Below are positions 2,752 through 3,450 of a stretch of 64,000 bases of DNA, one piece after another. The translations under genes and the position numbers were made by a program. This stretch comes from Perna viridis. Lineage: Eukaryota. The notes beneath the pieces were generated by a model. The model was not told the origin of the DNA, did no database searches, and saw only the letters and a list, made by a program, of their open reading frames with translations. Each line of letters opens with the position of its first letter. Position 1 is the stretch's first letter. The stretch lies in NCBI GenBank assembly GCA_037379345.1, contig CM074515.1, forward strand, positions 2,232,001-2,296,000, written 5' to 3'.

Positions 2752-3450
2752 ATGGAAGACGAACACCATCTTTATAGGAAAGAATTCTACGTTCTGTGGT
2801 GTTCCGGTATTAGAGAACACCCTATCGATGAAACCGTCCTTGTATGCTTTGCTACTGTCGATGAAGGGAGTACCACGATCATTCAAATATTCCATTCCAC
2901 TGAGGAAGATAATTTAAGAGCGGATGAAAAGTTTCTAGAATGGATATCAAATGACCCATATGTGTCAGAGAGTTCCGTATTACAACTTGAGCTCATTGGG
3001 AATGCATCTCCTTCCTTTGCTTTCGCTAATGCATTTTGTGATCTTATTTCGTCGTTTAAGGAAGCAGAAAAAACTGTCGACGTTGATTTGAAAATGGTTC
3101 GTTTGATAAACATAGAGGAAGACGAAGAAGACTTTATGGAGAATAGAGACGGCCTAAGATACCTGCACAACACAGGAATTAAGTTGTCCCCGGTCAGTGG
3201 TAAAGATTGGGGATATCTAAGACAAATTTTAAGGGAGAAGAAAGGTAACATTTATCAAGAAAACAACAGCATAAAAATACGTAAACGTTTGTCTACGATT
3301 ATAAAGAAACCTACAGATGTAGCTACCTTGTCGGAGGTGGATAAGACTGAAGTTCAAACTAGTACAGACAATCCAGAAATATCAGATGTAGAAACAATGA
3401 CGGATGTACCCGAGGAGGATAAAAGTGATTCTAGTTCAGATGAGGAGTAA
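2752..3450 (+). CDS. AID/APOBEC-like cytidine deaminase-fold protein, predicted catalytically inactive, with acidic C-terminal tail (232 aa)
   Basis: Motif order matches APOBEC: ETVLVCF (cf. ETYLCY), RADEKFL (cf. HAExxFL), NASPSFAFA (cf. SWSPCxxCA), VDLKMVRL (cf. LxIxxARLY), NRDGLRYLHNTGIKLSPVSGKDWGYL (cf. REGLRxLxxAGVxIxxMxxxDYxYCW). A splice acceptor ttttag|g at 2737/2738 is followed by an in-frame TGA before the ATG, so the CDS lies in one exon. Confidence 0.8.
   Translation: MEDEHHLYRKEFYVLWCSGIREHPIDETVLVCFATVDEGSTTIIQIFHSTEEDNLRADEKFLEWISNDPYVSESSVLQLELIGNASPSFAFANAFCDLISSFKEAEKTVDVDLKMVRLINIEEDEEDFMENRDGLRYLHNTGIKLSPVSGKDWGYLRQILREKKGNIYQENNSIKIRKRLSTIIKKPTDVATLSEVDKTEVQTSTDNPEISDVETMTDVPEEDKSDSSSDEE

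What the first reader, a model, noticed from the sequence alone, without database searches (positions are those of the whole stretch)
2752..3450. Stand-alone AID/APOBEC-fold pseudoenzyme with every zinc and catalytic residue replaced
Seen: an intact 232-aa ORF keeps the APOBEC motif spacing, but HxE reads R56-A-D58 and PCxxC reads P87-S88-F-A-F91. The structural motifs (ETxL, SP, RL, RxGLxxLxxxGI, DWxYL) are kept. The domain is very acidic and has an acidic tail ending SDSSSDEE, with a basic patch KIRKRLSTIIKK that may be an NLS. An in-frame stop before the ATG shows it is not the C-terminal half of a tandem-domain APOBEC. Known: invertebrates including molluscs have AID/APOBEC-like deaminases linked to immunity, and deamination needs H/E/C/C. 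Inference: loss of all four residues in an open ORF suggests a selected non-catalytic role, such as decoy, regulator of active paralogues, nucleic-acid mimic or scaffold.
Basis: partly seen in the sequence, partly recalled or inferred. Interest (0 to 1): 0.8.

Follow-up and report, generated by a model that had tools for sequence, protein, structure and literature searches.

The report
Conserved zinc-free APOBEC-fold protein in molluscs
This mussel gene encodes a transcribed, strongly conserved protein with the AID/APOBEC DNA-editing fold but none of the four residues needed for editing, and its relatives in mussels and snails share the loss, so the fold has been kept for a very long time for some non-enzymatic job.

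Summary
Window 2752-3450 (+) is an intact 232-aa ORF. It passes the Pfam cut-offs for NAD1 and APOBEC_N. Its AlphaFold model (domain pLDDT above 90) superposes on AID, APOBEC3C/F/G and APOBEC1 at Z 16-17, rmsd 2.0-2.5 A.

A profile alignment to APOBEC3F puts R56 on the zinc His, D58 on the catalytic Glu, and S88 and F91 on the two Cys.

It is not a recent pseudogene:
- RNA contigs from four studies show a spliced mRNA: a 5'UTR exon, a GT..AG intron, and one coding exon.
- An in-frame TGA precedes the ATG inside the mature mRNA.
- It is single-copy and syntenic with its Mytilus trossulus orthologue.
- dN/dS is about 0.04-0.1, with synonymous sites saturated.

The same replacements (R-A-E/D, S-P-x-x-x-F/T) occur in relatives from Mytilus, Gigantopelta, Haliotis, Patella and heterobranch snails. 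The loss therefore probably predates the bivalve-gastropod split.

No active classical AID/APOBEC paralogue was found in this genome, which weakens the decoy and paralogue-regulator ideas. The proposed NLS is the fold's last helix.

The most likely role is non-catalytic binding, through an acidified substrate-groove loop and a disordered, Ser-rich acidic tail. That role is inferred, not shown. Inactive AID/APOBEC-like proteins are already known as a phenomenon; this ancient zinc-free clade is a new variant.

The parts
1419..1687 (+). 5' UTR exon (the true 5' end is uncertain; contigs begin at 1419-1460)
   Evidence: RNA contigs of runs X1, X10 and X12 cover 1419/1429/1460-1687 and join to 2732. 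X3 shows the same joint.
1689..2731 (+). GT..AG intron in the 5' UTR
   Evidence: Joint 1687>2731, skipping 1043 bases, with GT..AG ends (cut +1). It is seen in one contig in each of 4 runs from 4 studies.
2732..3800 (+). Exon 2: the last 20 bases of the 5'UTR, the whole CDS and the 3'UTR. The 3' end near 3800 is approximate.
   Evidence: The X3 contig covers 2731-3800 with no differences. About 0.74 of the sampled words of 2400-3800 are held by 14 further runs, which fits the exon alone.
2743..2745 (+). In-frame TGA upstream of the start codon, inside exon 2
   Evidence: Sequence; exon boundary.
2752..3450 (+). CDS of the 232-aa zinc-free AID/APOBEC-fold protein (stop codon included)
   Evidence: ORF list, Pfam, orthologues.
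2770..3312 (+). AID/APOBEC-fold domain, residues 7-187 (a1-b1-b2-a2-b3-a3-b4-a4-b5-a5-a6)
   Evidence: AlphaFold model m3d934ed9935a has pLDDT 85-97 over residues 10-160. VIA-align gives Z 16-17 to AID, A3C, A3F, A3G and APOBEC1 over model residues 7-167.
2917..2925 (+). R56-A57-D58, in place of the H-x-E motif (zinc His and catalytic Glu)
   Evidence: Profile alignment to APOBEC3F HAE. The family column is R or K in 13 of 15 members, with A57 the same in all 15 and position 58 always D or E.
3007..3024 (+). S86-P87-S88-F89-A90-F91, in place of S-P-C-x-x-C (both zinc Cys lost)
   Evidence: Profile alignment to APOBEC3F SPCPEC. P87 is invariant. Position 88 has no Cys in any of 15 members, and position 91 is F or T (C in one member).
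3106..3144 (+). Acidic loop between strand 4 and helix 4 ('loop 7', residues 119-131, INIEEDEEDFMEN)
   Evidence: The conserved acidic pattern x-[DE]-[DE]-[DE]-A-[DE]-E-N holds across bivalve and non-heterobranch gastropod members. The active-looking coral relative P0029 has a basic and aromatic loop at the same place.
3274..3309 (+). Basic patch KIRKRLSTIIKK (residues 175-186). It is part of the last helix of the fold, so it is not evidence of an NLS.
   Evidence: Predicted helix H163-185. It aligns with the C-terminal helix of APOBEC3G. R177, K178, L180, I183, I184 and K185 are invariant among mytilids.
3313..3447 (+). Disordered acidic Ser/Thr-rich tail (residues 188-232) with an M216-T-D218 motif and a terminal SDSSSDEE
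   Evidence: pLDDT is below 50 from residue 190. Net charge is -14.6. MTD followed by an acidic Ser-rich end recurs in P0002, P0018, P0036, P0037, P0019 (Gigantopelta) and P0021; P0003 keeps MTD alone. The tail evolves faster than the domain.
3927..4009 (-). Last exon of the convergent neighbouring gene. Its transcript overlaps or abuts the 3' end of this gene.
   Evidence: Joint 4009>4535 with CT..AC ends, which is GT..AG on the minus strand. It matches M. trossulus L008 15494-15640.
4535..4690 (-). Upstream exon of the same convergent neighbour (a synteny marker)
   Evidence: RNA contigs. It is 86% identical over 56 aa to M. trossulus L008 16342-16533, part of a gene with a weak Pfam SPATIAL hit.

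Best explanation
The gene encodes a stand-alone protein that descends from AID/APOBEC deaminases and keeps their complete fold. It cannot bind the catalytic zinc or activate water, because the His, the Glu and both Cys are replaced (R56, D58, S88, F91). It is a pseudo-deaminase.

Shown: it is transcribed and spliced, single-copy, syntenic with its Mytilus orthologue, and under strong purifying selection. Relatives in mytilid mussels and several gastropod lineages carry the same replacements.

Inferred: the active site was probably lost before bivalves and gastropods split, and the fold has been kept since for a non-enzymatic job. The protein most likely works by binding a partner, more probably a protein than a nucleic acid. 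The likely binding surfaces are the conserved face formed by helices 4 and 5 (EN-x-x-GLR-x-L, GKDW-x-YLR-x-ILR) and the acidified former substrate-groove loop. The disordered, acidic, Ser-rich tail would act as a regulated, probably phosphorylated, appendage. It appears to act independently of any active AID/APOBEC paralogue, because none was found in this genome.
For: Fold and homology:
- Pfam NAD1 and APOBEC_N score above their cut-offs. All 15 family members tested hit NAD1, APOBEC4, APOBEC_N and SNAD4.
- Foldseek matches APOBEC3C, APOBEC3F and AID at E about 1e-9.
- The improved model has pLDDT above 90 in the domain. It matches AID, A3C, A3F, A3G and APOBEC1 at Z 16-17, rmsd 2.0-2.5 A, over 141-148 residues.

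Loss of catalytic residues: profile alignment to APOBEC3F and the family columns.

Expression: spliced contigs with a GT..AG intron in 4 runs from 4 studies. Twenty runs from 9 studies hold the exon. No coding differences were seen, while the 3'UTR varies.

Selection: own gene against P0002 gives dN 0.079 and dS about 1.9, so omega is about 0.04. Every other mytilid pair has saturated dS with dN 0.13-0.28.

Copy number and orthology: one match in the 723-Mb genome. The neighbouring gene is conserved with M. trossulus.

Age and breadth: a search of 1.84 billion representatives found only 17 relatives. Named ones are from Mytilus, Gigantopelta, Haliotis, Patella and Biomphalaria. Lymnaea, Physella, Bradybaena and Candidula were added. 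The tree shows a bivalve-like clade and a heterobranch clade, with a coral tandem deaminase as outgroup.

No partner paralogue: NAD1, APOBEC_N, Inv-AAD, APOBEC4_like, NAD2 and the coral protein found no other classical member in the genome.

Binding surface: loop 7 is acidic and conserved, whereas it is basic and aromatic in the active-looking coral relative. The acidic Ser-rich tail and its MTD motif recur across bivalve and gastropod members.
Against: - No binding partner, localisation or phenotype is known. The binding mechanism is inference only.
- Domain acidity alone is weak evidence against nucleic-acid binding. The active-looking coral relative is also mildly acidic, with pI 5.7-6.2.
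- The six-frame genome searches can miss multi-exon paralogues. A secreted protein with H-T-E...P-C-N-R-C does exist on another contig.
The taxonomic range within bivalves beyond mussels is therefore not established.
- Synonymous sites are saturated, so omega values are rough upper-bound style estimates.
- The tail motifs are missing in some members (P0004 group, Haliotis, Patella, heterobranchs).
Confidence: 0.8

Rival explanations
1. A non-editing nucleic-acid binder. The protein still binds ssDNA or RNA through the old substrate groove and sequesters or marks it without deaminating it, as was proposed for inactive APOBEC3 domains.
For: The AID/APOBEC fold is complete, with all loops present. 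Krishnan et al. [quoted passage not shown] Mild acidity does not exclude binding, because the active-looking coral relative has pI about 6.
Against: Loop 7, which reads the neighbouring bases in APOBECs, is a conserved run of Asp and Glu (IEEDEEDFMEN). Loop 3 (STEEDNL) is also acidic. The whole protein carries a net charge of -25 and the tail -14.6. No basic surface patch is evident apart from the structural last helix.
Confidence: 0.12
2. A decoy or regulator tied to active AID/APOBEC deaminases. Either it soaks up pathogen-encoded inhibitors of active paralogues, or it heterodimerises with an active paralogue to control it, as ADAT3 does with ADAT2.
For: Decoy and partner roles are the published suggestions for inactive AID/APOBEC-like proteins (PMC5889660). 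One secreted protein with H-T-E...P-C-N-R-C exists in the genome at C10.
Against: No other classical AID/APOBEC gene was found in the 723-Mb genome with six different queries. The one candidate carries a signal peptide, while this protein has none, so they would sit in different compartments. A decoy in an arms race should evolve fast and vary in copy number; this gene is single-copy with omega about 0.04-0.1 and constant loop lengths in non-heterobranch members. Krishnan et al. report a single representative in Biomphalaria. The only Biomphalaria relatives my searches found belong to this inactive family.
Confidence: 0.06
3. A recent pseudogene or a neutrally drifting ORF that happens to remain open.
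For: All four catalytic residues are lost.
Against: The ORF is intact in every orthologue. The replacements are shared from mussels to snails. Omega is far below 1. A spliced mRNA is present in many runs. Synteny is conserved.
Confidence: 0.01
4. It is still an enzyme, using non-canonical chemistry: a zinc-independent activity that uses the conserved Arg and carboxylate pair in the old pocket.
For: Arg or Lys at position 56 and Asp or Glu at position 58 are conserved in nearly all members, and A57 and P87 are the same in all 15 aligned members. The old pocket is therefore not decaying freely.
Against: No alternative set of metal ligands is conserved. The only invariant Cys is C32 in strand 1, and there is no invariant His. 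Gigantopelta has Leu and Candidula has Cys at position 56. To my knowledge no zinc-free hydrolytic deaminase of this fold is known.
Confidence: 0.02

Closest known systems
Catalytically inactive AID/APOBEC-like proteins noted by Krishnan, Iyer, Aravind et al. 2018 (PMC5889660): Ciona intestinalis versions, Evechinus chloroticus versions, some APOBEC3 domains
   Same: They share the superfamily and the phenomenon: loss of catalytic residues with the fold retained. The roles proposed there are non-catalytic (decoy or nucleic-acid binding).
   Different: In the main text those are described as repeated, lineage-specific inactivations within expanding, fast-evolving groups. This one is a single-copy, slowly evolving clade shared by bivalves and gastropods. 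It has lost all four residues and has no active classical paralogue detectable in the genome. The paper's main text does not name a molluscan inactive clade. Its supplement was not available to me.
Pseudo-catalytic N-terminal domains of double-domain APOBEC3 proteins (for example A3G-NTD, A3B-NTD, A3F-NTD)
   Same: They have the AID/APOBEC fold and no deamination, and they work by binding. The structures match at Z about 16 (5k81-5k83, 5tkm).
   Different: From my own knowledge, those domains keep the H-x-E and P-C-x-x-C zinc site, are basic and bind RNA, are fused to an active domain, and are restricted to mammals and evolve fast. This protein is stand-alone, zinc-ligand-free, acidic and ancient.
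APOBEC2 (vertebrates)
   Same: It is a single-domain, slowly evolving AID/APOBEC member with no demonstrated deaminase activity. Krishnan et al. and Liu et al. 2018 both class it as inactive or of unknown substrate. There is a weak Pfam APOBEC2 hit. From my own knowledge, it also carries an acidic extension.
   Different: APOBEC2 retains the zinc motif. It is found only in vertebrates. Its acidic extension is N-terminal, not C-terminal. The Pfam APOBEC2 score here (19.5 bits) is below the cut-off of 26.8.
ADAT3/Tad3, the pseudo-catalytic subunit of the tRNA A34 deaminase
   Same: It is a deaminase-fold paralogue that lost catalysis and is conserved because it works by binding. PMC10354150 appears and describes a 'pseudo-catalytic' ADAT3 domain.
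   Different: It belongs to a different deaminase family. From my own knowledge it keeps the zinc ligands and loses only the Glu, and it needs the active partner ADAT2. No active partner was found here.
Classical invertebrate AID/APOBEC clade (i) of Krishnan et al. 2018 / Pfam Inv-AAD (PF18785); closest active-looking relative found is the tandem protein of the coral Oculina patagonica (P0029)
   Same: This is the probable parent clade. The relatives P0019 and the P0017 cluster carry precomputed Inv-AAD hits. The coral protein was the only HAE/SPC-bearing hit of the family profile (E = 1e-4).
   Different: The coral protein keeps HAE and SPC, has two domains, and has a basic and aromatic loop 7. 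The window's protein itself gives no Inv-AAD hit at E <= 10.

Membership tests
AID/APOBEC (AAD) superfamily, membership by descent | Sequence match to curated family models above their cut-offs | tested here: met
   NAD1 35.8 bits (cut-off 27), APOBEC_N 35.1 (25), APOBEC4 33.8 (27.2), SNAD4 27.6 (27). All 15 family members hit the same four models.
AID/APOBEC (AAD) superfamily, membership by descent | Five-stranded sheet with six helices in the order a1-b1-b2-a2-b3-a3-b4-a4-b5-a5-a6 | tested here: met
   The model's elements in order are H10-20, E28-36, E41-49, H57-67(+69-73), E76-83, H89-104, E108-115, H128-140, E144-147, H150-159, H163-185. It matches AID and APOBEC3 at Z 16-17.
AID/APOBEC cytosine deaminase, as an enzyme | H-x-E motif at the start of helix 2 (zinc His and proton-shuttle Glu) | tested here: not met
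   R56-A57-D58 aligns with HAE of APOBEC3F. The His is absent in all 26 aligned family members.
AID/APOBEC cytosine deaminase, as an enzyme | P-C-x-x-C motif at the start of helix 3 (two zinc Cys) | tested here: not met
   P87-S88-F89-A90-F91 aligns with PCPEC. The first Cys is absent in all members. The second position is F or T, with C in one Candidula protein.
AID/APOBEC cytosine deaminase, as an enzyme | Measured zinc content and C-to-U activity on ssDNA or RNA | not testable with these tools
   This needs recombinant protein, metal analysis, and a mutator or oligonucleotide assay.
Pfam Inv-AAD (PF18785) | Match to the model above 26.5 bits | tested here: inconclusive
   The window's protein is not listed at E <= 10, and the genome-wide search with the model finds nothing. 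The relatives P0019 and P0032 (a member of the P0017 cluster) do carry precomputed Inv-AAD hits.
NAD1 clade (vertebrate 'novel AID/APOBEC clade 1') | Vertebrate clade with an intact active site, inside the core vertebrate group | tested here: not met
   NAD1 is the best Pfam hit, but the scores for NAD1, APOBEC_N and APOBEC4 are tied, so the hit is generic. The active site is absent. The family was found only in molluscs, whereas NAD1 is described as vertebrate-only.
APOBEC3-type pseudo-catalytic domain | Inactive domain that retains the zinc site and is fused N-terminal to an active domain | tested here: not met
   The protein is stand-alone: an in-frame stop lies upstream in the mRNA, and one 232-aa ORF ends in a disordered tail. 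The zinc ligands are absent.

The most novel reading that the evidence does not exclude
Molluscs carry an ancient, single-copy AID/APOBEC-fold family that lost its zinc site before bivalves and gastropods split. In mussels, and perhaps in Biomphalaria, it would be the only classical AID/APOBEC-type gene left. If so, the fold has been retained for several hundred million years purely for a non-deaminase function. One candidate function is an acidic adaptor or nucleic-acid mimic, regulated by phosphorylation, that engages a basic partner through the acidified substrate groove and the C-terminal MTD and Ser-acidic tail.
Probability: 0.35. Interest if true: 0.75.

Novelty: new variant of a known kind. 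Interest (0 to 1): 0.58.

Why it matters
AID/APOBEC proteins are studied almost entirely as mutators. Inactive members are usually treated as by-products of fast-evolving immune gene expansions.

This case is different. It is a stand-alone, zinc-ligand-free member that is single-copy, expressed and under strong constraint, and it is shared by mussels and several snail lineages.

If its partner can be found, it would show what the AID/APOBEC scaffold can do without catalysis. That bears on the unresolved roles of APOBEC2, APOBEC4 and the APOBEC3 pseudo-catalytic domains.

There is also a practical point. Molluscan 'APOBEC-like' genes counted in immune-gene inventories are not all deaminases. 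The lone Biomphalaria representative may well be this inactive form.

Tried and rejected
- Single-sequence search of PDB sequences: no hit. The mytilid-only profile gave only chance-level hits, with AID at E about 1. A broader family profile was needed.
- Other genome hits of the NAD1 and APOBEC_N models. C8:28998782 (L004) has no HxE and only a chance 'CPCIHC'. C9:13083648 (L006) is full of stops with no motif. I rejected both as paralogues.
- Genome searches with Inv-AAD, APOBEC4_like, NAD2 and the coral protein found nothing.
- The word search with family alignment A3 did not re-find P0015-P0022, so it is not a complete census.
- Gene neighbourhoods of the gastropod and unnamed relatives (L009, L016-L018) showed no shared neighbours within 10 kb. 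Synteny beyond mussels is untested.
- Domain acidity as an argument against nucleic-acid binding was downgraded once the active-looking coral relative also proved mildly acidic.
- Literature searches found no description of this molluscan clade. The supplement of Krishnan et al. 2018 was not available.
- Earlier scan notes held nothing on deaminases in this genome.
- I did not use the third word-based protein search to name P0015-P0018, to save cost.
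Full report
**1. What is in the sequence**

Window 2752-3450 (+) is a 232-aa ORF that starts with ATG.
- R56-A57-D58 is 2917-2925.
- S86-P87-S88-F89-A90-F91 is 3007-3024.
- ETVL (27-30), RL (117-118), RDGLRYLHNTGI (132-143) and DWGYL (152-156) are all present.
- An in-frame TGA sits at 2743-2745.
- The protein has pI 4.49 and net charge -25. 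The last 45 residues alone carry -14.6.

**2. Gene model and expression**

The window lies at C5:2232001-2296000 of a 723-Mb, 46-contig genome, and the gene is single-copy there.

Twenty public runs from nine studies hold most of the sampled words of 2400-3800. Fourteen of them hold a constant 0.74 share, which is the size of the exon alone.

I laid the contigs of four runs from four studies on the window. All four show the same joint, 1687>2731, with GT..AG ends on the + strand. The contigs are therefore RNA-derived, and the gene has three parts:
- a 5'UTR exon at about 1419-1687;
- a 1043-base intron;
- a single exon from 2732 that holds the whole CDS.

The TGA at 2743 lies inside that exon, so the protein cannot extend N-terminally. 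It is stand-alone. No coding difference was seen in the four runs, whereas the 3'UTR differs at several places.

The same contigs run on into exons with CT..AC joints (4009>4535). These belong to a convergent minus-strand neighbour whose 3' end meets this gene's 3' end.

**3. It is a true AID/APOBEC-fold protein**

Pfam scores exceed the curated cut-offs for four models: NAD1 35.8 bits against 27, APOBEC_N 35.1 against 25, APOBEC4 33.8 against 27.2, and SNAD4 27.6 against 27.

The first AlphaFold model was built on 14 mytilid sequences. It already matched APOBEC3C, APOBEC3F and AID with Foldseek at E about 1e-9 and probability 1.0.

A second model on 26 family members reached pLDDT 85-97 over residues 10-160 and has the canonical a1-b1-b2-a2-b3-a3-b4-a4-b5-a5-a6 order. 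It aligns to AID, A3C, A3F, A3G, A3B, A3H and APOBEC1 at Z 15.7-17.1, rmsd 2.0-2.9 A, over 138-150 residues. Residues 190-232 are predicted disordered.

**4. All four catalytic positions are replaced**

A profile of 15 family members matches the APOBEC3F catalytic domain at E = 2.6e-5. In that alignment the family's 'rAe' falls on HAE and 's-P-l-k-a-f' falls on S-P-C-P-E-C. The equivalences are:
- R56 = the zinc His;
- D58 = the catalytic Glu;
- S88 and F91 = the two zinc Cys.

In the model these residues sit at the N-termini of helices 2 and 3, where the motifs lie in solved APOBEC structures. No alternative ligand set is conserved. The only invariant Cys is C32 in strand 1, and no His is invariant.

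**5. The loss is old and shared**

The word-based search found 14 close relatives at 60-100% identity. One is Mytilus trossulus LOC134722286. All read R/K-A-D/E and S-P-x-F-x-F.

I then ran the mytilid profile against 1.84 billion representative proteins. It returned only 17 hits. P0015-P0022 are 27-43% identical to the window's protein, and seven of these eight read R/K-A-E-D (Gigantopelta P0019 reads L-A-D-E). All eight read S/P-P-x-x-x-F/T.

Named members are Gigantopelta aegis, Haliotis asinina and H. rubra, Patella caerulea and Biomphalaria. A further search added Lymnaea, Physella, Bradybaena and Candidula. These read S-R-A-E-D, except S-R-S-E-D in Physella P0046 and S-C-A-E-D in one Candidula protein, P0030.

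The only hit with an intact HAE/SPC was a tandem-domain protein of the coral Oculina patagonica, at E = 1e-4.

A maximum-likelihood tree rooted at the midpoint puts the coral domains outside. It recovers a clade of mytilids plus four unnamed sequences (support 95/92) and a heterobranch clade (100/100). The other gastropods are unresolved at the base.

The simplest reading is a single loss of the zinc site before bivalves and gastropods diverged, followed by vertical descent. The bivalve-gastropod split is Cambrian by established palaeontology; I did not date it here.

**6. Selection and orthology**

Nei-Gojobori estimates on codon alignments give dN 0.079 and dS about 1.9 (omega about 0.04) for the window's gene against its closest relative, P0002. 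Every other mytilid pair has saturated synonymous sites with dN 0.13-0.28. The domain is more constrained than the tail.

Exons of the convergent neighbour are at window 3927-4022, 4530-4697 and 8053-8130. They match the gene next to the M. trossulus orthologue, with up to 86% identity over 56 aa. That supports orthology.

**7. Which non-catalytic role?**

*Decoy or paralogue regulator.* Searches of the whole genome with NAD1, APOBEC_N, Inv-AAD, APOBEC4_like, NAD2 and the coral protein found no other classical AID/APOBEC gene. Two weak hits are chance or debris.

The one candidate deaminase is a 456-aa secreted protein on C10 with H-T-E...P-C-N-R-C. It scores below the cut-off for every model, and it would be in a different compartment from this protein, which has no signal peptide.

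A slowly evolving single-copy gene also does not look like a decoy in an arms race. Krishnan et al. 2018 report a single representative in Biomphalaria. The only Biomphalaria relatives found here belong to this inactive family.

*Nucleic-acid binding.* The loop between strand 4 and helix 4 (loop 7) contacts the neighbouring bases in APOBEC-DNA complexes; that is established knowledge. Here it is a conserved acidic run (IEEDEEDFMEN; family pattern [DE][DE][DE]-A-[DE]-E-N). It is basic and aromatic in the coral relative.

This favours a protein partner, or mimicry of nucleic acid, over nucleic-acid binding. The argument is indirect, because the coral domains are also mildly acidic overall.

*Tail.* The disordered tail carries an MTD motif followed by an acidic Ser-rich end. 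This arrangement recurs in the window's protein, P0002, the P0018 cluster, Gigantopelta and P0021. It suggests a short linear motif plus an acidic, phosphorylatable appendage. That is inference only, and some members lack it.

*NLS.* The KIRKRLSTIIKK patch is the last helix of the fold, not evidence of an NLS.

**8. Comparison with what is known**

Krishnan et al. [quoted passage not shown] They suggest decoy or binding roles. The phenomenon is therefore known.

Liu et al. 2018 (PMC5956068) discuss invertebrate members that were inactive in their assay, by analogy with APOBEC2 and APOBEC4.

I found no paper describing a zinc-free clade shared across molluscs. The 2018 supplement was not available to me. 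Some members are labelled 'AID domain-containing protein' in UniRef and carry Pfam Inv-AAD hits, so the sequences are catalogued but not interpreted.

Against the APOBEC3 pseudo-catalytic domains, APOBEC2 and ADAT3, this family differs in having lost all the zinc ligands. Those three keep the zinc ligands, from my own knowledge. Unlike the APOBEC3 domains and ADAT3, it also stands alone, with no active partner found.

**9. Verdict**

This is a real, expressed, constrained pseudo-deaminase. It belongs to the AID/APOBEC superfamily by descent and fold, but it is not a deaminase.

It is a new variant of a known kind. Interest is moderate to high. The function is still inferred, and finding the partner is the key experiment.

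Noticed in passing
G000:C10:2032888-2036112 (L003 691..2061, minus strand); not in the window: A 456-aa ORF with an N-terminal signal-peptide-like segment, an H-T-E ... L-P-C-N-R-C deaminase-type motif pair, and a C-terminal half of about 250 aa rich in Trp and Tyr. It hits SNAD4, APOBEC_N, dCMP_cyt_deam_1, NAD1 and Toxin-deaminase only below their cut-offs (E about 1e-3). It may be a secreted deaminase and is the only active-looking candidate found in this genome.
   Followed up: partly
window 3800-4690 and 8053-8130, minus strand: A convergent neighbouring gene whose last exon (ending about 3927-4009) abuts or overlaps the 3'UTR of the pseudo-deaminase gene. RNA-seq contigs merge the two genes into one contig of about 2.4 kb. 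It is orthologous to the M. trossulus neighbour, which has a weak Pfam SPATIAL hit. In M. trossulus the two genes lie about 4.7 kb apart; here they lie about 0.5 kb apart.
   Followed up: partly
window 1-1000 and 5400-5800: These stretches have very high summed contig depth in RNA runs (thousands, against 35-80 for the gene). They also show many different short joints and loose ends. That pattern is typical of a dispersed or tandem repeat family that is transcribed or very abundant.
   Followed up: no
window 19225-21487, plus strand: Three exons match Pfam Ribosomal_S19e (RPS19), about 16 kb downstream of the gene. A piece conserved with the P0005-type mussel contig lies at window 18499-18582.
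   Followed up: partly
P0028, P0030, P0044-P0048 (heterobranch snails): The heterobranch members carry an insert of about 50 aa in the loop after helix 1 and a 12-20-aa insert in loop 7 with His and Cys residues. They sit on a long branch (length 2.0). Their version of the protein may have acquired a new feature.
   Followed up: no
L008 10001-10765 (Mytilus trossulus LOC134722286, P0003): The annotated product shares the MTD motif, then ends in about 35 residues (GGETIFGTPGSAFFGIGKLG...) unlike any other member, in place of the acidic Ser-rich end. This could be a lineage-specific change or a frameshift or annotation effect in that assembly.
   Followed up: no
L011-L013 (P0004-P0014 group): A tight group of 210-aa orthologues with a short tail (…ENAEFQKLQLLK) appears in many samples, including JGI metagenome records. 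These are probably mussel host contigs within symbiont or gill metagenomes. The organism was not identified.
   Followed up: no
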